A stretch of DNA of 64,000 nucleotides from Dendrobates tinctorius (GCF_039654945.1 NW_027361707.1:40548001-40612000); one strand, 5' to 3'. Positions 5,298 to 53,700 are shown, counted from the first letter of the stretch. The notes: generated by a model from the sequence alone, not told the origin. Made by a program: numbers and translations.

Positions 5298-6551
5298 TAC
5301 ATTTTACTCAAAAATATACTTATAAAGAGATAAATCAGAAAAACTGAAGTGGTCTCTTAATTTTTGCCAGAGCTGTATTTTTCAGAATTACGGTACTTCT
5401 TGTAATTTGTGCAATATGAAGTCAGCAGTGGTCACAATTTTGCTAAATCGTAGAGGGCTGGCAGAATGTATGAAAAAAATAAAAAATAGAAGACCAACAG
5501 ATGCTGAAACCGCGGCCGTGACCAGGCTTGGGACCTCCCGCCGTAAGGTCACCACGTGCGCTACTAGTTTGGCACCAGGCCTGGGACGTCCTTGTGCATG
5601 TGCACCCTAATATAACTTTGTCCTGACCTAGTCTGAAAAAGCCAAGGATTTCAGCCCCCAATAGCATTAGAAAGAGGCACATCAAGCAGCAGAGCATCGG
5701 GTGATGAAGTTTTAGTTGTTTTCTGTTTTTTGCCATTTTACGTTTATTATGCTCTGGGCTCTAGATCGACCCCAGAGCATAATAAGGGACATTGTATTTG
5801 AGGAGTAAAAAAGAAAAAATCCATTGAAAATCAAATTTCCCCTATACCAGCTGCTCGATTTGGCAAATCCAGATCTCAGCAAATTCGATCATCTCTAATA
5901 ATCACTATTATCCTGTGATTTAATGAGGCCTAAAATATAGTTAAAGAGGCCCAGTGAAGAATTGAGCAGGATCATTATATCAGGGCATATACACCTGGTG
6001 AAATAAGTATTAAACACGTCACCAATTTTCTAAGTAAATATATTTCTAAAGGTGCTATTGACATGAAATTCTCACCAGATGTCGGTAACAATCCATCCAA
6101 TCCACACAGGCAAAGATATCAAACCATAGATATCCATAAATTAAGTTAAGTGTAATAATGAGAACTGACACAAGGAAAAAGTATTGAGTACATGAAGAAA
6201 GCGAGGCGCAAAAACCATTAAAAGTCATGACACCAGCTAAAGTCTATCAGTTTTTAGAAAGCAATAATGAAAAAAGTCTTAGTTACTCACCGGTTAACGG
6301 TATTTTTCGGAGTCCATGAAAGCACCACCTGAGAGAGGGGATCCGCCCTTTAGGAACAGGAAACCTACAGATACAAAAAGGGTGGCACCTCTCCCACGCA
6401 TCAGTTGGATTACAGAGCACAAGAGGACTTCCAAGGTTAATGCATGATTTATGTACAGTATTCTTTACAATTATAACTTTTATCACCAGTGAGCATATAC
6501 AAGAAAAAAGACGTGCACACCCCAATTAAACTATAAGGGAGGGAATATACG

Positions 6552-6638
6552 GGTGCTGTCATGGACTCCGAAAAATACCGTTAACCGGTGAGTAACTAAG
6601 ACTTTATTCGGTCGTCCATGACAGCACCACCTGAGAGA
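6552..6638 (-). repeat. DIRS internal complementary region (ICR)
   Basis: Left half is the reverse complement of ~6273-6326 and right half of ~11825-11856. The halves join at ctaagactttattcggtcg, the predicted circle junction. Confidence 0.93.
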
Positions 6639-6660
6639 TTTACAGAGAGTAATATCAGCT

Positions 6661-8091
6661 TTAGGGAGGGACTACAGCCTGCAGCACCCTTATACCAAAA
6701 GAGAGGTCTGTGGAAGCACCCAGGTCTAGCCTATAATGACTATAAAAGGTGCTTGGAGAGGACCAAGTAGCCGCCTTACATATCTGGTCGATGGAGACTT
6801 CTGATCTTTCGGCCCATGAGGTTGCCATTGCCCTGGTGGAATGCGCCCTCAGCTTTCCGGGTGGCGACCTGCCCTTTGATGTGTATGCTATTGCAATCGC
6901 CTCTCTAATCCATCTGGCTAGTGTATTTTTTGATGCTCTACAACCTTTTCTGGGGCCTTGATGAGAGATAAATAGGGCATTATCTTTCTTCCATGGATCG
7001 GTGACTGACAGATATTCTATGAGGCCTCTCCTGACATCCAGGGTGTGTAGTTTCCTTTCCTTCTCGTTAGTTGGATTAGGGAGGAAGGATGGCAGAACTA
7101 TATCCTGTGTCCTATGGAAACTAGAAACTACCTTTGGCAAGTACGCTGGATCAGGTCTAAGTATTACCCTATCCTCTTTAAACTGTAAATAAGGAGGACA
7201 CCTAGATAAAGCCTGAATATCGCTTATTCTGCGAGCTGATGTTAGAGCTACCAGGAAGGCTACCTTGAGGGACAGGTTTTTTAGGGAAGCCGACGAGATA
7301 GGTTCGAATGGAGTCTCTGTCATAGCAGTGAGGACTAGGTTCAAGTCCCACGGCATAAACCTATCCTTCATTATTGGCCTGGATCTCCCTGCTGCCTTAA
7401 TGAATCTGCTTATCCAATAATTACCAGCAATGTTACAGCTAAACAGAGCCCCCAAGGCTGACACTTGTACTTTAAGGGTACTGGTAGAGAGCCCCATGTC
7501 CAGACCTTTTTGTAGGAACTCTAATATCTGCATTATAGGTGCTGAATCTCCAGCGATTACTTTTGAGTTTTGAAGGAATTTTTTCCAAATCCTAACGTAA
7601 ATTTTTGTGGTAATGATTTTTCTACTTTTAAGTAGGGTGTTAATTAGGTCTGCGGAGAAACCCTTCTCTTCTAATAATGACCGTTCAAACTCCACGCCGT
7701 CAGATGAAGGCCAGCCACCTGAGGATGGAAGACTGGGCCCTGGGACAGGAGATCCGGGATGTCCGGCAGAACCCAAGGATCGGCCACCGACATGGTCCTG
7801 AGGCATGAGAACCATGCTCTCCTGGGCCAAAACGGAGCGATAACTATCACCCTTGCTCTGTCTTTCCTGATTTTCCTCATCACTAGGGGTAGAAGAGATA
7901 GGGGAGGGAAGGCGTAGGCTAGTTTGAAGTCCCAGTTTATCAGGAAGGCATCTACCGCCAGAGGATTTTCTCTGGGATTCAGGGAGCAGAATTGTTTCAA
8001 TTGCGTGTTGTCTCTGGTGGCGAATAGGTCTACCTCTGGATATCCCCACTTTTGAACAATCAGATTGAATATGGAGGTGTTTAAAGACCAT
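6661..8091 (-). CDS. DIRS tyrosine recombinase
   Basis: Catalytic R-H-x-x-R-Y signature: SARRISDI, HSTR, TFYSHY. The first ~135 aa overlap pol and may not be translated. Confidence 0.93.
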   Translation of the reverse strand: MVFKHLHIQSDCSKVGISRGRPIRHQRQHAIETILLPESQRKSSGGRCLPDKLGLQTSLRLPSPISSTPSDEENQERQSKGDSYRSVLAQESMVLMPQDHVGGRSLGSAGHPGSPVPGPSLPSSGGWPSSDGVEFERSLLEEKGFSADLINTLLKSRKIITTKIYVRIWKKFLQNSKVIAGDSAPIMQILEFLQKGLDMGLSTSTLKVQVSALGALFSCNIAGNYWISRFIKAAGRSRPIMKDRFMPWDLNLVLTAMTETPFEPISSASLKNLSLKVAFLVALTSARRISDIQALSRCPPYLQFKEDRVILRPDPAYLPKVVSSFHRTQDIVLPSFLPNPTNEKERKLHTLDVRRGLIEYLSVTDPWKKDNALFISHQGPRKGCRASKNTLARWIREAIAIAYTSKGRSPPGKLRAHSTRAMATSWAERSEVSIDQICKAATWSSPSTFYSHYRLDLGASTDLSFGIRVLQAVVPP

Positions 8092-9566
8092 TCCCCTTGC
8101 TTTAGCCGATTGCGGCTTAAAAAGTCTGCCGTGATGTTGTCTTTTCCTTTTATATGCAATGCTGTTAAAGATAGGAAGTATTGTTCTGCTAGATGGAACA
8201 ACCGCTCTGCTACAAACATCAGGGGTCTGGAACGAGTCCCGCCTTGGTGATTGATGTATGCCACGGTGACCTGATTGTCGGAGAACACTCGCACGTGATG
8301 GCCCTGTAGGTACACAAGGAGCTTTTTAGCCGCCTGTTCTACTGCTGTCAATTCTTTTAGGTTAGATGACATTCCTAACTGATGATGTTGCCATTGGTCC
8401 TGGACTAAAATTTCACCCATATGAGCTCCCCAACCGTAAGGACTAGCATCCGTGGTGACTATGCGGGTTTCGTTATACTCCCAGGGCACCCCTTTTGTTA
8501 AGTTATCCTTGTCTAACCACCACTCTAGGGACTCCCTTGTGTTACGGGATAAGGTTAGCTGACCCTCCAAGTAACCTCCAAGGACTTTTTGATGTAATAA
8601 GACCTCGCTCTGTAGTTTCCTTGCATGAAACTGGGCCCACTGGACTGCCGGGATACAGGCCGAAAGAGAGCCTAGAAGGGACATGGCTTTTCTGAGGGAC
8701 ATGGTGGGGTTATTGGAGGCGTTCAGGATCTGATAATGGAGGCGAACAAGCTTGTCCGGAGGCAGACGGCATTCCTGTTTTTCAGAATCCAGGGTTAGGC
8801 CCAAAAATTGTTGGACTTTCATTGGTTGCAACCGGGACTTTTTGACGTTCAGCAACCATCCTAACCGTTCTAGGGCAGACATTGCCTTTTGTAGCTGTTG
8901 TAAACAATGGTTCGCCGTTTTACCTACAATAAGAAAATCATCCAGGTAGGGGATCACCAGAATGTTCGATTCACGTAGATGGGCCATGACCTCCGCTATC
9001 ACCTTAGTAAATACTCGGGGAGCAACTGCCACTCCAAAAGGGAGGGCCGCATATTGGAAATGTCGAACTGACCCATCCAACTGAACCGCCACTCTGAGGA
9101 ACCGCTGATGGCCTGCATGGATGGGTATATGGTAGTATGCGTCTTTTAAATCTAACACCACCATGAAGCAGTTTTGGAACAGCAATTTTATTGCAGATTT
9201 AATCGTTTCCATCTTAAAGGGACGTATGACCAAAAATTTGTTGAGGGCCTTAAGGTTAATTATTGTCCTAAAGGAGCTGTCCGGTTTGCGGACCAGGAAC
9301 AGAGGGGAGTAGAATCCCTTCCCCCATTCTTCCTCTGGAACCTCTATCAGGACTTTCTTAGCGCACAGGTTATGAACCTCGGCTTCCAGGGCAGCTTGTT
9401 CTGCCGCAGATGACCTGAGTGGGGTGATTTTAAATTGATCAAGGGGAACCCTAGAAAACTCTAGTCGTAGTCCCATGGCTATTATCCCCAATATCCAGCT
9501 GCTATTGGAGATCAGAGACCAGGATGGGTAGAAGGCAGCTAGTCTCCCTCCTACTGGGGCAACTAG
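7671..9566 (-). CDS. DIRS pol: reverse transcriptase, RNase H and adenine methyltransferase-like domain
   Basis: LDLKDAY, LPFG, YLDD (RT); TTDAS, SDN, ADFLSR (RNase H); VDLFAT..YAFPP..APFWP (MT-like). The frame stays open back to the gag stop (LVAPVGGRLAAF...). Confidence 0.95.
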   Translation of the reverse strand, partial: LVAPVGGRLAAFYPSWSLISNSSWILGIIAMGLRLEFSRVPLDQFKITPLRSSAAEQAALEAEVHNLCAKKVLIEVPEEEWGKGFYSPLFLVRKPDSSFRTIINLKALNKFLVIRPFKMETIKSAIKLLFQNCFMVVLDLKDAYYHIPIHAGHQRFLRVAVQLDGSVRHFQYAALPFGVAVAPRVFTKVIAEVMAHLRESNILVIPYLDDFLIVGKTANHCLQQLQKAMSALERLGWLLNVKKSRLQPMKVQQFLGLTLDSEKQECRLPPDKLVRLHYQILNASNNPTMSLRKAMSLLGSLSACIPAVQWAQFHARKLQSEVLLHQKVLGGYLEGQLTLSRNTRESLEWWLDKDNLTKGVPWEYNETRIVTTDASPYGWGAHMGEILVQDQWQHHQLGMSSNLKELTAVEQAAKKLLVYLQGHHVRVFSDNQVTVAYINHQGGTRSRPLMFVAERLFHLAEQYFLSLTALHIKGKDNITADFLSRNRLKQGEWSLNTSIFNLIVQKWGYPEVDLFATRDNTQLKQFCSLNPRENPLAVDAFLINWDFKLAYAFPPLSLLPLVMRKIRKDRARVIVIAPFWPRRAWFSCLRTMSVADPWVLPDIPDLLSQGPVFHPQVAGLHLTAWSLNGHY

Positions 9567-11118
9567 TCATTGGGGCGGCTTTTTCGTATCCCGAGCTGGA
9601 CCTTCCTGGCGCCCTCCCCCAAACATGAATCCTGTACCTTTCCTTTTTTTATCATCCCATCTGCCCTGATCTCTGGACGGCCTTCTCCGGAAAAACCCTT
9701 TCCTGGCGAAGGGACGTCTGTAAGAGGGGTTCGGGAGACTGGGAAATTTCTTTTTGTCATCTCCAGCTTTCTCCAACAATTCGTCCAAGACGGGGCCGAA
9801 TAGGTACTCCCCCTCACAGGGAATGGAACAGAGACGGGACCGGGCTTGAATATCTCCTGGCCAGCATTTTAACCAGAGCGCTCTTCGCGCTGCATTAGAC
9901 AGACCTGCGGCTTTAGCCGCCATTCTTGCAGAGTCTGCAGAAGCATCGGCTAAAAACGCCGCGGCATTCTGAATGATGGGCAAATTTTTCCGAATAGATG
10001 ATCTTGAAGCTCCATCTCTTAGTTCGGAATCTAGCTGATCCAGCCAGACCATCATAGATCTGGCTGTACAGGTGGCAGCTACCGCTGGTCTTAACGCGCC
10101 TGCTGACATCTCCCATGTCCCTTTAAGGAAAGAATCCGCTTTTTTATCTAACGGATCTTTCAGGGAGGCCATATCGTCAAATGGTATGGCGGATTTTTTA
10201 GATGCTTTGGCTACTGCTGCATCTAGTTTCGGGGCTTTATCCCATCTGCTTACTACCGGGTTATCGAAGGGGTATCTCCGCTTAAAGGCTGGTGGCATGG
10301 AGCCCCTTTTCTCCGGTCTCTTCCATTCTCTATCAATTAGGCTCTGAACCTTTTCGTTCAATGGAAAAGCTTTACGTTTTTTGGGGTCCAACCCCCCGAA
10401 CATTATGTCCTGTGCTGAGAGTTCCCGTTTTTTCTCCGCTACCCCCATGGTGGACCGTATGGCTTTCACTAATTTGTCCATCTGGTCTAAGGGGAAGCAG
10501 AACCGGCTAGAGTCTTCATCCGAGGAAGACGACGAGGAGGCCGAGGAGTCCGAGGAATTGTCACCCTTCCCAGGGGCGACTGAGGCCTCCGAGCCTGAAC
10601 CACTAGCCTCTCTTCTCCTAGAAGGTTCTCTTTGAGGTAAAGCTTTCATTTCTGCCCTGATCATGTCTCTCAGGTTTGAAGTGAAGTCAGGTGTCTCTTC
10701 CGCTACCTGCATAAACGGGGGAGAGTATAAGGGCCTGACAATCTACCCCTGGACTCCCTGTCCTTAATAACTCCTACCGTCTGCCGTATGCATGGCTGGC
10801 ATAACTTTTTAGGGTGGCCATCTGGTAGGGGGGAACTACAGAGGGGACATTCCCTGTGTTTCTGTTTTCCCGTAACCTTCTTCCCCTGAAAAAAAACATA
10901 AGGGAACACTGCATCAGGGTACATTCACGGAGATCTCTTACCCATGCAGATGAGGCAGGTACCGGATCACGGAGGGAGGCAGGGGGGTCCTTTCTGGAGG
11001 AACTTTCGCGGCTCTGGTCGCTAGTTCGTCTCTGTTTCTTCTGTTGGCCACTCGCCTGTTTCTGCGGGTGCTCCTGCGTCTCGTCCTGCTGGACTAAGGG
11101 GGCTTCCGACGTATCCAT
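9567..11118 (-). CDS. DIRS gag-like ORF1; predicted exons 11118-10942, 10885-10778, 10706-9567
   Basis: The 381-aa ORF sits at the gag position and has vertebrate-DIRS-like motifs (KLDAAV, LKDPLDKK, RRALWL, LFG). Two GT-AG introns join phase 0 to phase 0 and add a CxxC-x12-CxxC exon. Confidence 0.75.
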
Positions 11119-12772
11119 TGCTGGGGCCTTCAGAAGCACCCCAGCGGCGTCCCTATCTGCCTTATATGGCCTCCTGTCCGGGTCAGCAGGCATCCTGCCG
11201 TAGCACCACCCACCCGGCTTTTGCGTTCCCTCCCCCATGCTCCGGCCCCCCTTGCCTTCGCCGGGTCGCCGCGCGACCCCCGGACCGGCATGCACCCGCG
11301 GCGCGCGCCGGAAGCCGCTGGCACCCGACTTCCGGTATCGGCACTATCGCTCCGCCCCTTCCGCCGCGTCACTTCCGCCGCTCACAGAGCCCTGCGGGAG
11401 CGCGCGCGAAGGAGCCGCGCAGCCCCGCCCGGAGTGCCAGCACCCCCCGCGCCCGCCGCCATGAGCCCGGCCAGGGGACAGCACCGACCCAGAGGACCGG
11501 GCCTGGGGAAGCGCACCGGGGTATACATACCAGGTGCTGGCTTTGGAGACGGCATCCACCGGACCACTGCTCCACCTGCTTCGTCCACTGCCGTGGTGAC
11601 CTACCCGGCCCCACCGTGGCGCTTCCAGGGACCCCGCACTGACCGAGGGAGGAGACCCCCTCGCTACCTGGGTCGGTCAGCCGGCCTGGGTATTCAATGA
11701 TGATTCCATGACGGACGATCTGTAGAGAGTCCTGTCCTCTAGGAACAGGAAACCAACTGATGCGTGGGAGAGGTGCCACCCTTTTTGTATCTGTAGGTTT
11801 CCTGTTCCTAAAGGGCGGATCCCCTCTCTCAGGTGGTGCTGTCATGGACGACCGAAAAAAAGGTGTCTTGTTACCAAGGTGCCACAAAAGATGGGTAAAA
11901 CTAAGACTTTCAGAGCCGTATTGTTGAAAAACATGCTGATGGTGTTGCTTACAGAAGAATATGTAAACTACTGAAGGTCCCAGTGAGCATTGTTAGGGTA
12001 TGTGCACACGTTGCGAATTTGGCTGTGGATTTTTCAGCGTGGATTTAGGTGAATCCGCAGGTAAAACGACCTGCATTTTACCTGCGGATTTCAAAATGTT
12101 TAAAATTTTTGCCCAATTTCTGATATTTTCTCAAATAAACTCAAGTCTTATCAAATAAATGTTACCACTATCATGAACTACAATATGTTACTAAAAAACA
12201 ATCTCAGAATCAGTTGGATCTGTTGAAGCGTTCCAGAGTTATTACCTCATAAAGTTAAATACCTGGTCAGAATTGTAAAATCTGGCCTGGCCATGGAGGT
12301 GAAAACAGGCTTTGGGGTAAAGGGGTTAAATAAATTTCAGTACACATGTTCAATACTTTTTCCCTGTGTTATTTCTCATTATTACACATAACCTTATTTA
12401 TTTCTTTACAGGTGTGGATTGGATAGGTTGTTACTGACATCTGCTGAGAAATTCATGTCAATTGCATCATTAGAAATGTCTGAAGACCTCTCTAGGAAGC
12501 ACATCTCTGGTACTTATTCTAGGGAAATCTGAAGCTGAGGTCATGCATATGGCATTTGTGGCTTTTACACTCTATTAAGAAATTATGTTACAAAAAAAGG
12601 CAATGAAAATAAATTTAATAACACACCACATAAAAAGCTAGTTTTTGTTTGCATGTTACATGATATTCACAGTAGAATTGCTTTATGGCTTCTTTACCTA
12701 GAGTCAACCAATATGTTTTAAATTCCCTGCAATAGGCAAACATAATAGGACAAAGGAACTTAAGCAGCATTA

Positions 12773-31742: not shown

Positions 31743-33186
31743 TTAACTCCTTAGTGACGGAGCCAAATTTTTGAAATCTGACCAGTGTCACTTTATGTGG
31801 TAATAACTCCGGAATTCTTCAACATATCACATTGATTTTAAGTTTTTTTTTTTTCCTGACGTATTATACTTTATGATAGTGGTAAGTTTATGGTGCTATT
31901 TTCTGCCTTTATTTATGCAACTATCAGAAATTTTACAAAAATTTCAAAAAATTACCCATTTTCAAACTTTGAATGATTAACATTAATACAGTAAATAACA
32001 TTTCCCTCATCCCTGCTTTACGTCACAGTGCACCAATTGTAAAATGTTGTTTTATGTTGTTAGAATTTTAGAAGGTTTAAAAATGTAGCAGTAAGATTTC
32101 ATTTTTTTTCAAGGAAATTTTTACAAAACTTATTTTTTTAGAGACCTATTCAGTTTTGAAATGACTTTGGGGGTCCTATATATTGGAAACCCCCAAAAGT
32201 GATATCATTTTAAAAACCGCCCCCCCCCCCTCGTTATATTCAAAATTGCTTTCAGGTAGTTTATTGACTGTGCTGTTCCATCTAAGGTTATGATTGTATG
32301 CTTATATAATTGTGTTATGTTACCTTTCTTTGTATTAAGTTTTGCATCAGGTCTGCTGCCACCTGCTGTCCTTTTCTGTATAGCAGACGGCAGCTAATTA
32401 ATTCTAGTACATGCCTCTCACTTCCAGGTCAGATGGCTCCTTCTCTTCCTGCCGGTGGCCATTACTAGATTCATCTTCACCCGGGAGAGACACACTTACC
32501 AGGCTGTGGAAGGCATCAGTTTTTTGACCACTTCGTTGCTCACACAACTTGCTGCACACATCTTGCTGTACCACCTGGGTTGTTATTGTTACACCTGCAT
32601 TTCTGGAGAAGTACTGCATTACCAATCATACGCTGTATGTCCAGATCTCCAATAAACAAGTCTGGACTTCACAATATCCGGTGTGTATCATCTCTCCGGA
32701 CGCATAAACAGCAAACCAGCAACAATGGTCCTGTCTGCTCTGCACTGAGGAAACGGAAGGTAGGAATCTCTCCCAGCCCCACTCATCTACACCTCTATTC
32801 GCCTCATGTGGGGACAGAACATTAACCCTTCAGATGCTTTTCAGGAATTAATGCATGACAGGAATGAAGAAGTTTATTTTTAGCACCTAAAACTTTCTAA
32901 CTTCTAAACAGTCCACTGTAGCCGACAGACTCTAAGCAAGTCATTTGTCCACGTATTGCCATCACAAATATCAGGACCACACAATCAAGATCTCAGGGTG
33001 CCGATGGGGGTTAAAGAGGGAGCCCCCACATTCTGTTAACCATCTAGATGCTGTCGTCATTATTGACAGCAGCATTTAAGGGGTGAAACAACTATAGTCA
33101 GTACTAACACTGCTCGTGGCTGATACAGTAAGTTGTTAGCTGTAGTGGTCAGTAAAAAGACGCATTGGTGGTCACAATGGGATTAA
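31743..33186. mobile_element. Decayed piggyBac-like non-autonomous element
   Basis: Starts TTAACTCCTTAGTGAC and ends GGTCACAATGGGATTAA. Related pieces at ~12100-12330 and ~50906-51365. Confidence 0.5.
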
Positions 33187-50787: not shown

Positions 50788-53700
50788 GGTTCCAAGTTGT
50801 GAAACATGTACCAGAATCACGACATCCCAGAGATCGCCATCAAGTCCTAAAGCAACGGAAGGTCTTTGCGGTACATGATTTACCTTCGTTATGTCCAAAT
50901 TGTTTTAACCCTTTAGTGATGGAGCTAATTTTGACCTTAATGACCAGGCCAAATTTTTAAAATCTGATCATTGTCACTTAATATGGGAATAACTTTGGAA
51001 CGCTTCAACGAATCCCAGTGATTCTGAGTTTTTTTTTCGCAATTTTCAAACTTTAAATTTTTTATGCCCTTACAGCAGAAGGTTATACCACACAAAATAG
51101 TTAATAAATAACATTTCCCATATGTCTGCTTTACATCTGCATTAATTTTGAAACATAATTTTTTTGATAGGAAGTTAGAAGGGTTCAAAGTTGATCAGCA
51201 ATTTCTAATTTTTGAAAAAACATTTTACAAAAGTATCACATTTGAAGTGACTTTGGGGGGTCTATATGACAGAAAATACCCAAAAGTGACACCATTCTAA
51301 AAAATGCACCCCTCAAGGTGCTTAAAGCCACATTCAAGAATTTTATTAACCCTTCAGGTGCTTCACAGCAATGAATGAAATGTGGAAGGAGAAAATTAAC
51401 AGACCCAGTTTCTCATTTGTTTCATTGTGCATTCTGTGCATATAAGGGTGTGACCGCCCTGTTTCTGAGTTGGAAAATCCATCCTGTCTGGTCTATACTA
51501 TTACTGGTGGTTCAGTCCCTCTGTCCTTGTTCACATTTATGTCACTTGACAAGTGGAAAGGTTTTAAATACAAGAGTTAGGACTGTCCCACGGGGGTTGC
51601 CTTGACGTGGCAGGATGGCTTCTACATTATTTTGATCAAAATTATGTTAACTAAATACCCTTATTATTACTATTATTACTACCTTAATGCAATTTTTGCA
51701 ATATATTTTTTACTTTTTTATTCCAGGATATTTGTTTTGTTTTTGGTTTTCGCTGCTATCTCCGTGTATGACTCCTTGCCTACGTTCTGACTGTTCTCTG
51801 CTCGCTCCTCCTGTACCGCACCGCCCCCTCCACGTATAACCCCCGTTTGTCCGACATGAGTTCCCCTCTCCTCTACTCCAGGGTCCCTGCAGCATCCTGC
51901 ACTCATCTCCAGCAGCCGGATGCTAACCCCCACCCCCTGTGGTCACATGATCGCAGGTCCTTCTGCTTCCTGCTACCCTCAGCGTCCCCTCTCACCAAGC
52001 TGCTCAGGTCCCATCTGCCTGAGCTTCCCCCACAGCATCTGACACCCGCAGTGTGGGTGAGTCACCCTGCTCAGCCGTGGCAGTTCGCAGGTGCTGACAG
52101 GATCCTGATAAAGCCCCACCCTAACCCTGAGCCCAGCCGTAACCCCAATCCTAACAATAAGCCCAACCCTAAACCTTCCTCAACCCCAATGGCAAATAAT
52201 GAAACAAATAAAAATTATAAAATAAAAAAAATAGTCTGACTAAGGGGATGACACAGGGGGATGACATACTAATTACTGGCTTTTGCTCATTGTGATAAAG
52301 TCCTTCACAGTGATAAAGTCCTTCACAGTGATCAAAAGGAATCAATAAGAAAATTCCCTGCTGTAACCAGGTGCTTTTTCATAAAGAGACGAAGGGTCGG
52401 GGGTCAGAGCAGGAGGGACTGGGGGATGGAGGAGATACTGGGGGGATTGTAGACATAATTTCTCTCTCCATTCACATGTATATCATGTCAGAAGAGACAG
52501 AAATGATTTTAATAGCGGGCACACTTTTTTCAGTGAATAAAGGCGATCACGTGATCGGGGACCAGAAAATCCAGCCCTGATTGTGTTCTCCAGCGGGTAC
52601 CTGAGACCCTGGATTTTTTGACATACAATCATTTTCCCTGTAAATATGGTTTAACATCCTTTTAAATAATCCAATGATTAGACTTATTTGTACATTCTCC
52701 GCTTCACTTGCGACTTCCCTTGGCATTGATGTCACTTCCTCCCTTGGCGTGTTTCCACATGACTCTTTTACCATGATGCCATGATGTTTTTTTTTTCCAA
52801 ATCACAATCAAATTAAAAAATAGTAGAATACAATAAAAATTAGAAGTCGTGCAGTTTTTACACTGGCAAATGGGGCTATTTAAACTTAAAATTAGTGTTG
52901 TTTCAGTAAATCCATAGGAGCATTAAAAGCAACACACTTACTCAGGCCTTATCTTTTGTATTGAAGAATCTAATAATCGTGTGCAAAAGTTATTTTGAAT
53001 TCGAGAGGGGAGCACGGTCAGCTGTGACATCACCTACAGTGAATTAGAATCCAGATTCTTATGATAAGGAGTTTACTGAAAACTACATTATATGGTGTAG
53101 TCACGATCTGGACATGTCAGTTCTCTGTGTCACAATCCATTTGGTTTTGGCTAGACTGGGGTGTGGAGTCAATGTAATTTCCTGGTCTTTAACCATAACC
53201 CAAGCAGGGAGATATAGAAGATTGCTAAATTGAAGAATCAAAAATAATTGTTGGAAGTAGTGTTCATGGAGAAAAAGTGTAGCTAGTAACAAAGTCAAGA
53301 GTCATCATCAGTACAGCGGCTAGGATGGTGCAGGTCACCATATGGAATGGCTCAGAGCCAAGAGTAGAATAATTAGTACCAAACACTGAATATCACTGTG
53401 CAAGGCACTGTGTATTTGCAATGAAGGTGCCTGGATGCAACGTACAGAGATCACTAGGCAGAAACAGCCAAGGGTTGATATACTGGTATTTTTATACAAC
53501 AATAACTTCTAAACAATTAGGGTTAGTAAATATACAAATTAACAATATAGAGAATTATAGCAGGCTATGAACAAGCTAGAAAGTCTCTCAGTACTTAACG
53601 TTAGTGGTGCGTCCAGTCTTGGGAGACACCACGTGAGTTCTCACTTAAAGCTCTGGCTTTAGCGGAGGTCACCGAATTTTTTACGCTAGGCCGCAAGTCT

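What the first reader, a model, noticed from the sequence alone, without database searches (positions are those of the whole stretch)
9491..9580. DIRS gag-pol junction is an in-frame CAA-UGA-CUAG readthrough site
Seen: gag ends CCG CCC CAA TGA and continues in the same frame with CTA GTT GCC CCA GTA GGA GGG AGA CTA (LVAPVGGRL...) with no further stop into RT. The conserved-looking VGGRL..F...W segment lies upstream of the first ATG of pol. Established: UGA-CUAG is a leaky stop context in alphaviruses and several vertebrate genes. Inference: Pol is made as a Gag-Pol readthrough fusion. Together with the introns, this would make RT expression depend on both splicing and recoding.
Basis: partly seen in the sequence, partly recalled or inferred. 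Interest (0 to 1): 0.78.

Follow-up and report, generated by a model that had tools for sequence, protein, structure and literature searches.

The report
Leaky stop joins frog retrotransposon Gag-Pol
A full-length DIRS-type retrotransposon of a poison-frog-like genome separates its gag and pol genes by one in-frame UGA followed by CUAG, and this arrangement is kept in four other diverged lineages from three frog species, so Pol is most likely made by programmed stop-codon readthrough.

Summary
On the minus strand, gag ends CCG CCC CAA TGA (TGA at 9569-9567). CTA GTT GCC CCA GTA GGA GGG AGA CTA follows in the same frame, which stays open for 631 codons through RT, RNase H and methyltransferase. 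The first ATG (9476-9474) lies after the conserved VGGRL..F...W segment.

The stop is not a private nonsense mutation. Four related lineages from Ranitomeya variabilis, R. imitator and Dendrobates tinctorius (two loci) keep TGA-CTAG in the same frame. Three have CAA before it and one has CAG. Synonymous sites around it are saturated.

The 30 codons after the stop have dN/dS of about 0.2, like the rest of pol. The three lineages readable there (the fourth is too degenerate) have no ATG for at least 95 codons.

These five loci form one clade. It is nested among frog DIRS lineages whose pol is in the +1 frame and whose gag stop is TGA in six of seven loci read. The in-frame readthrough layout is therefore derived.

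No SECIS or significant downstream RNA structure was found. The evidence is comparative only, and no reads, ribosome or reporter data bear on it.

Other first readers of this scan proposed gag-stop recoding (readthrough to recombinase, +1 shift to pol) in other DIRS copies of this genome, but not this in-frame Gag-Pol layout.

Verdict: a likely programmed UGA-CUAG readthrough, a new carrier of a known mechanism.

The parts
9567..9569 (-). UGA stop codon that ends gag, in frame with pol
   Evidence: TGA is kept at the homologous place in L001, L002, L008 and L013.
9563..9566 (-). CUAG directly 3' of the stop, the known readthrough-promoting context
   Evidence: It is invariant in all five lineages of the clade. 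At conserved Leu positions the same codon occurs in all four lineages at only 2 of 39 places, one of them this CTA. The motif's role is described in PMC4132726.
9570..9572 (-). CAA, last sense codon of gag (Gln)
   Evidence: It is CAA in four of five clade members and CAG in the degenerate L008. It is also CAA in four +1 families. Of 57 Gag-like hits, 18 end in Gln, one of them (P0143) by coincidence.
9570..10712 (-). Gag ORF, 381 aa, with a LAP2alpha-like domain. It is probably the 3' exon of a longer Gag.
9477..9566 (-). 30 codons between the stop and the first ATG of the pol frame. They include the conserved VGGRL..F...W segment.
   Evidence: dN/dS is 0.17-0.24 against sister lineages.
7674..9566 (-). 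pol: 631 codons without a stop, holding RT, RNase H and a Dam-like methyltransferase
   Evidence: Homologues are listed.
6664..8091 (-). Tyrosine recombinase ORF, 476 aa. It is in the -1 frame relative to pol and overlaps pol by 418 nt.
11750..11859 (.). Left inverted terminal repeat (the 5' end of the element on the minus strand)
   Evidence: 96% inverted match to 6303-6411.
6303..6411 (.). Right inverted terminal repeat
6552..6638 (.). Internal complementary region. Its two halves are complementary to the two termini.
   Evidence: 6552-6609 matches 6269-6326 and 6603-6638 matches 11825-11860, both inverted at 96-97%.

Best explanation
The element at about 6269-11860 (minus strand) is an intact DIRS1-like tyrosine-recombinase retrotransposon. 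Most ribosomes stop at the gag UGA and release Gag. A small fraction decode the UGA with a near-cognate tRNA, helped by the CUAG that follows and probably by the CAA before it. These ribosomes continue in the same frame and make a Gag-RT-RNaseH-methyltransferase fusion. This sets a low Pol to Gag ratio, as in gammaretroviruses. The layout is a derived state. A net loss of one nucleotide between the conserved gag UGA and the VGGRL motif moved pol from the ancestral +1 frame into the gag frame. The CUAG context accompanies it in every member of the clade. Shown here: the anatomy, the conservation of stop, context and frame in five lineages, purifying selection right after the stop, and the nested position of the clade. 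Inferred: that ribosomes read through, and how often.
For: 1. Sequence and frames were read directly. 2. TGA-CTAG is kept in frame in L013 (R. variabilis), L008 and L002 (D. tinctorius) and L001 (R. imitator), while the neighbouring codons differ at synonymous sites. 3. dS between these lineages is 0.6 to above 2. dN/dS of the first 30 codons after the stop is 0.17-0.24, the same as the next 60 codons. 4. L001, L002 and L013 have no Met in the first 95 codons after the stop. 5. At conserved positions the same codon occurs in all four lineages at only 2 of 39 Leu and 2 of 10 Gln places, yet CAA, TGA and CTA are all identical. CAATGACTAG ties for the longest invariant run in a 2.9-kb alignment. 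6. The decaying copies L002, L013 and L008 carry different breaks in pol or gag but all keep the stop and its context. 7. The five frame-0 loci form one clade (support 87/90) inside +1-frame lineages. 8. UGA-CUAG supports 1.5% to about 31% readthrough in vertebrate cells, and the motif is conserved across vertebrates (PMC4132726). The codon just before the stop has the largest upstream effect (preprint 10.64898/2026.07.14.738498). 9. The family is highly repeated in its host, with many contigs at least 99% alike. No majority alternative letter was listed at 9563-9569, whereas nearby private differences were. This last point is weak evidence.
Against: There is no direct evidence of readthrough. 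All runs laid were assembled contigs, so expression, strand and ribosome behaviour are unknown. No significant RNA structure follows the stop (z = -0.78; consensus -9 kcal/mol with almost no covariation). Efficiency would therefore rest on the short context alone. The invariant 10-nt run is not exceptional by length alone: about 1.4 such runs are expected in the alignment and 2 were seen. Only five lineages were sampled, and three of them are decaying copies. In the Candida element Tca2, an in-frame gag-UGA-pol junction did not direct readthrough in a reporter (PMC2194720), so the layout alone is no proof. The conservation of the stop among this family's own copies in the host genome could not be counted, because 981 rows were not shown.
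Confidence: 0.74

Rival explanations
1. Pol is translated on its own, from a subgenomic or internally promoted RNA or by non-AUG or internal initiation just after the stop. The UGA is then an ordinary terminator.
For: In Tca2 the gag-pol junction held a minor promoter and did not support readthrough in a reporter (PMC2194720). The recombinase ORF of this element has its own ATG.
Against: The sister lineages have no ATG for at least 95 codons after the stop, yet those codons are under purifying selection from the first codon on. This model does not explain the invariant CTAG and CAA at otherwise saturated synonymous sites.
Confidence: 0.09
2. A short intron spanning the stop is spliced out, so Gag-Pol comes from a spliced mRNA and not from recoding.
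For: Gene models of related +1-frame families join gag to pol by a short intron. One example is a 94-nt GT-AG intron in L010. Gag itself seems to have short introns further upstream.
Against: The donor used in L010 is not conserved: L001, L002 and L013 have no GT at that site. Different gene models join at different places. No joint across 9567 was listed in any of four runs, and the listed nearby joints lack GT-AG ends, though 96 joints were hidden. Codons on both sides of the stop are conserved as protein. No fused models were found for this clade.
Confidence: 0.07
3. The stop is a disabling mutation fixed in a dead lineage, and the context is a coincidence.
For: Three of the four sister loci are decaying copies.
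Against: The same stop and context occur in five lineages from four genomes whose synonymous sites are saturated. Pol remains under purifying selection after them. The window copy has intact gag, pol and recombinase ORFs and 96% identical terminal repeats. The family has many contigs at least 99% alike in its host.
Confidence: 0.03
4. The UGA is recoded in another way, for example as selenocysteine or by paired frameshifts around the stop.
For: UGA is the selenocysteine codon.
Against: No SECIS or other Rfam family matched in 6000-12200 at E up to 1, apart from one sub-threshold bacterial sRNA hit outside the element. No slippery site is conserved near the stop. The A-run upstream varies between lineages.
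Confidence: 0.02

Closest known systems
UGA-CUAG programmed readthrough of vertebrate genes (OPRL1, OPRK1, AQP4, MAPK10) and alphaviruses (PMC4132726)
   Same: The seven-nucleotide core UGA-CUAG is identical. The extension is in frame and under protein-coding selection. The stop and motif are conserved across diverged lineages. No long downstream structure is required.
   Different: Here the extension is a 631-codon polymerase, not a short C-terminal tail. The carrier is a genomic retrotransposon. Efficiency is unmeasured.
Gammaretrovirus gag-UAG-pol readthrough, as in murine leukaemia virus (from general knowledge)
   Same: The logic is the same: one in-frame stop between gag and pol sets a low Gag-Pol to Gag ratio.
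   Different: Those viruses use UAG and need a pseudoknot a few nucleotides downstream. Here the stop is UGA and no significant structure was found.
Candida albicans Tca2 gag-UGA-pol (PMC2194720)
   Same: It is a retrotransposon with gag and pol separated by a single in-frame UGA.
   Different: In Tca2 the flanking sequence failed to direct readthrough in a reporter. Tca2 is a Copia-type LTR element without the CUAG context.
Other frog DIRS1-like elements with overlapping ORFs (PMC9210276, PMC3266345; loci L003-L007, L010-L012)
   Same: They have the same gene set, the same terminal and internal repeats, and a homologous Gag tail. In six of seven loci the gag stop is also TGA at the same place, five to eight codons before the GGRL motif.
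   Different: In those families pol is in the +1 frame with a 204-318 nt overlap. In five loci the gag frame stays open after the stop into the recombinase. In the window's clade pol is in frame and the long recombinase-frame overlap is closed by many stops.

Membership tests
DIRS1-like tyrosine-recombinase retrotransposon | Reverse transcriptase and RNase H of the Ty3/Gypsy-like type | tested here: met
   RVT_1 scores 9e-20 and RT_RNaseH 1.6e-06, both above their cut-offs.
DIRS1-like tyrosine-recombinase retrotransposon | Tyrosine recombinase instead of an integrase | tested here: met
   The Phage_integrase match (5.2e-05, 23.5 bits) lies just under Pfam's cut-off of 27.1. The ORF also aligns at 42-73% identity to the recombinase region of DIRS loci of other frogs.
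DIRS1-like tyrosine-recombinase retrotransposon | Inverted terminal repeats plus an internal complementary region matching both termini | tested here: met
   the repeats 11750-11859 and 6303-6411 are 96% alike, and 6552-6638 is complementary to both ends.
DIRS1-like tyrosine-recombinase retrotransposon | Methyltransferase domain after RNase H | tested here: inconclusive
   The Dam match is only 0.0059 and 16.7 bits, below the cut-off of 28.1.
Programmed stop-codon readthrough, UGA-CUAG class | UGA followed directly by CUAG | tested here: met
   It is invariant in five lineages.
Programmed stop-codon readthrough, UGA-CUAG class | In-frame downstream ORF with a protein-coding signature starting at the stop | tested here: met
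   There are 631 open codons. dN/dS is 0.17-0.24 in the first 30 codons.
Programmed stop-codon readthrough, UGA-CUAG class | Stop identity and 3' context conserved at the nucleotide level across diverged relatives | tested here: met
Programmed stop-codon readthrough, UGA-CUAG class | Measured readthrough product or ribosome density beyond the stop | not testable with these tools
   Only assembled contigs were available, with no raw RNA or ribosome data.
Gammaretrovirus-type readthrough | UAG stop with a stimulatory pseudoknot or stem-loop about 8 nt downstream | tested here: not met
   The stop is UGA. The fold of the 150 nt after it is not better than shuffles (z = -0.78). No covarying consensus structure was found.
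Selenocysteine recoding | SECIS element in the transcript | tested here: not met
   No Rfam match lies within the element at E up to 1.

The most novel reading that the evidence does not exclude
The gag UGA of frog DIRS1-like elements may be an old recoding hub. In the ancestral layout one leaky UGA-C would have three outcomes: Gag by termination, a Gag-recombinase fusion by readthrough into a frame kept open for about 800 codons, and Gag-Pol by a +1 shift. One dendrobatid clade then rewired the hub by a net one-nucleotide loss, so that readthrough of the same stop, now with the stronger CUAG context, yields Gag-Pol. The long recombinase-frame overlap, no longer reachable from gag, filled with stops. 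L010 has TAA instead of TGA and has also lost the open overlap, which fits the idea that the overlap is kept open only where a leaky UGA leads into it.
Probability: 0.35. Interest if true: 0.8.

Novelty: new member of a known kind. Interest (0 to 1): 0.56.

Why it matters
How DIRS elements translate their overlapping or adjoining genes has not been worked out. Nine text searches of the open literature found no paper on recoding in DIRS elements. If the reading holds, this clade is a retrotransposon that uses the same UGA-CUAG signal as vertebrate readthrough genes and alphaviruses. It would be a naturally replicated test case in an animal genome, with hundreds of copies. It also comes with a built-in comparison, because sister lineages keep the same stop but reach pol from the +1 frame. 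The switch between two recoding modes can therefore be studied on nearly the same sequence. For annotation it means that Gag-only and Met-started pol fragments in frog gene sets are halves of one translational unit.

Tried and rejected
1. Counting the stop among this family's own copies. Read laying returned only the 40 best-supported differences of more than 1000. None was at 9563-9569, but no frequency can be given.

2. A third protein search with the last 120 residues of Gag, meant to collect partial ORFs ending at the stop, found a single hit.

3. I first read pol hits that begin 'M-GGRL' (P0013, P0015) as ORFs starting just after an in-frame stop. Their DNA shows +1-frame elements where the gene caller simply chose a GTG start. 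That inference was dropped.

4. Downstream RNA structure: none was significant.

5. SECIS or any other Rfam element: none was found.

6. A canonical -1 slippery heptamer, UUUAAAC, lies at 8085-8079 at the start of the pol/recombinase overlap. It is not conserved in any relative, so it is taken as chance.

7. A conserved splice donor that could bypass the stop: the strong donor of L010 is absent from most families.

8. The length of the invariant run as a statistic: a 10-nt run is about what the alignment predicts, so it is reported only descriptively.

9. L002 and L013 both change frame in the RNase H region. The breaks are at different places, so they are independent decay and not a shared architecture.

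10. Literature: the founding DIRS papers from subscription journals are not in the searchable library. An earlier remark there about an in-frame stop cannot be excluded.

Full report
**Observation.** The finding lies on the minus strand. The 381-codon ORF 10712..9570 ends in TGA at 9569-9567. The same frame then runs for 631 sense codons to 7674. The first ATG of that frame is at 9476-9474, 31 codons after the stop and after the VGGRL..F...W segment.

**What the element is.** Pfam assigns LAP2alpha to the first ORF. It assigns RVT_1 and RT_RNaseH, with a weak Dam match, to the second ORF. A 476-codon ORF that overlaps the end of pol in the -1 frame has a weak Phage_integrase match. The window holds one copy. 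It has 110-bp inverted terminal repeats (11750-11859 and 6303-6411, 96% alike). An internal region (6552-6638) is complementary to both termini. This is the anatomy of a full-length DIRS1-like retrotransposon spanning about 6269-11860. The best protein matches come from poison frogs (Dendrobates, Ranitomeya), so the host is a dendrobatid or a close relative. Contigs of public runs of the host species show the family to be highly repeated, with many pieces at least 99% alike.

No other copy is in the window, so I fetched related loci through annotated proteins of other frogs. Four loci belong to the same lineage group:
- L013, R. variabilis, about 75% nucleotide identity to the window
- L008, D. 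tinctorius, about 80%
- L001, R. imitator, about 67%
- L002, D. tinctorius, about 67%

All four have TGA CTA G at the homologous place, in the gag frame, five codons before GGRL. The codon before the stop is CAA in three and CAG in the degenerate L008. The neighbouring codons differ freely at synonymous sites: CCG/CCA/GAC/AAT before CAA, and GTT GCC CCA / GTC GCC CCG / GCG ATC CCT / GCA ATT CCC after CTA. No locus has a sense codon there.

**Is the stretch after the stop translated?** Between the window, L013, L001 and L002, dS is 0.6 to above 2. dN/dS of the first 30 codons after the stop is 0.17-0.24, the same as for codons 31-90. L001, L002 and L013 have no Met in the first 95 codons. A start at a downstream AUG would skip a stretch that selection keeps as protein.

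**Is there constraint at the nucleotide level?** At positions where all four lineages keep Leu, the codon is identical in all four at only 2 of 39 places, and one of these is the CTA after the stop. For Gln the figure is 2 of 10. CAA, TGA and CTA are nevertheless all identical. CAATGACTAG ties for the longest invariant run in a 2.9-kb alignment, although it sits in the poorly conserved Gag tail. About 1.4 runs of that length are expected by chance, so I give this descriptively only.

The decaying copies L002, L013 and L008 carry different breaks elsewhere: frame changes in the RNase H region at different places, and a stop in the gag of L013. All three keep the junction.

**Mechanism.** UGA followed by CUAG is the motif shared by the efficiently read-through vertebrate genes OPRL1, OPRK1, AQP4 and MAPK10 and by several alphaviruses. 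UGA-CUA alone gives 1.5% readthrough, and full contexts give 3.5% to about 31%. The motif is conserved throughout vertebrates, and 12-15 nt after the stop suffice (PMC4132726). A recent preprint reports that the codion just before the stop has the largest upstream effect (10.64898/2026.07.14.738498).

I found no significant RNA structure after the stop (z = -0.78; consensus fold -9 kcal/mol with almost no covariation). I also found no SECIS or other Rfam family within the element.

The most likely mechanism is therefore context-driven near-cognate decoding of UGA. It would give a Gag-Pol fusion at a few percent of Gag. That ribosomes actually do this is an inference. The runs available were assembled contigs, which cannot show expression. 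Tca2 is a warning: an in-frame gag-UGA-pol junction can fail in a reporter (PMC2194720).

**Wider context.** Of 57 Gag-like proteins from many frog DIRS families, 18 end in Gln at the homologous position. They come from Ranitomeya, Dendrobates, Engystomops, Dendropsophus, Bufo and Xenopus, and one of the 18 (P0143) ends in Gln by coincidence. I read the DNA behind eight such loci (L003 and L004 are two copies of one family).
- L003 and L004 (R. imitator), L005 (Engystomops), L006 (Bufo) and L007 (Xenopus) end gag in CAA TGA.
- L011 and L012 end in CTG TGA.
- L010 ends in TAA.
- In all eight, pol lies in the +1 frame, and the pol frame is open for 204-318 nt before the gag stop where measured.
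- In L003, L006, L007, L011 and L012 the gag frame stays completely open for 772-833 codons after the stop, and it holds the recombinase.

A maximum-likelihood tree of pol places the five in-frame loci in one clade (support 87/90). That clade is nested inside +1 dendrobatid lineages, with Bufo, Engystomops and Xenopus outside. The in-frame layout is thus derived. Compared with its nearest +1 relative, there is one nucleotide fewer between TGA and the GGRL codons. In the window and L001 the recombinase frame upstream of its ATG is full of stops.

Other first readers of this scan, looking at other DIRS copies of the same genome, proposed that the gag stop serves readthrough to the recombinase and a +1 shift to pol. 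My loci from other species agree on the frames and the open overlap. They do not test the recoding itself.

**Gene models.** NCBI models of the +1 families join gag to pol through short introns, for example a 94-nt GT-AG intron in L010. The joining points differ between families, and the L010 donor is not conserved. I cannot tell whether these are real splices or a device of the gene predictor. No such fused model was found for the in-frame clade. There the models are Gag ending at the TGA (P0121, P0122) and pol fragments starting at internal Met codons (P0006, P0009, P0010).

**Novelty.** Text searches for DIRS together with readthrough, read-through, frameshifting or stop codon found no paper on recoding in these elements. 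A large review of frameshifting does not mention them. The founding DIRS papers are not in the searchable library, so an earlier remark cannot be excluded. The mechanism and the motif are known. The carrier and the switch from a +1 layout are new as far as I can see. I file it as a new member of a known kind.

The case rests on five lineages and on sequence comparison. Broken copies were read through with X only for the tree.

Noticed in passing
L003:4007-6509, L006:3611-6113, L007:3927-6429, L011:1472-3942, L012:523-2843: In five frog DIRS loci whose pol is in the +1 frame, the gag frame has no stop for 772-833 codons after the gag TGA, and it contains the recombinase. One leaky stop would therefore link Gag to the recombinase. 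L010 (TAA stop) and the window's clade have this frame closed by about 27-33 stops.
   Followed up: partly
window 10775-10885 (-) and 10707-10774 (-): A conserved Cys-rich segment (C..C then C..C, like a zinc knuckle) aligns to the N-terminal 100 residues of longer Gag proteins of sister families. It is separated from the 381-codon ORF by about 68 nt and a frame change. Listed contig joints nearby (10738 to 10809 or 10812) do not have GT-AG ends.
   Followed up: partly
L010:2372-2465: The NCBI model P0001 (27 near-identical members) joins gag to the +1 pol frame through a 94-nt intron with near-consensus donor and acceptor. The donor is not conserved in other families. It may be real or a gene-prediction device.
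   Followed up: partly
window 8079-8085 (-): The canonical -1 slippery heptamer UUUAAAC lies in the pol frame just after the recombinase ATG. It is not conserved in nine relatives, so it is probably chance.
   Followed up: yes
L002 and L013, pol codons about 392-407: Two decaying copies from different species change frame in the RNase H region, at slightly different places. This is independent decay, yet both keep the gag stop and CTAG.
   Followed up: yes
window 12052-12159 (-): There is a sub-threshold Rfam match to a Rhizobiales sRNA (23 bits against a gathering score of 40) just outside the element. It is almost certainly chance.
   Followed up: no
window 12099-12305 versus 31762-31948 and 50929-51037: The flank next to the element's 5' end shares 74-77% similarity with two other places in the window. 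This looks like an unrelated dispersed repeat.
   Followed up: no
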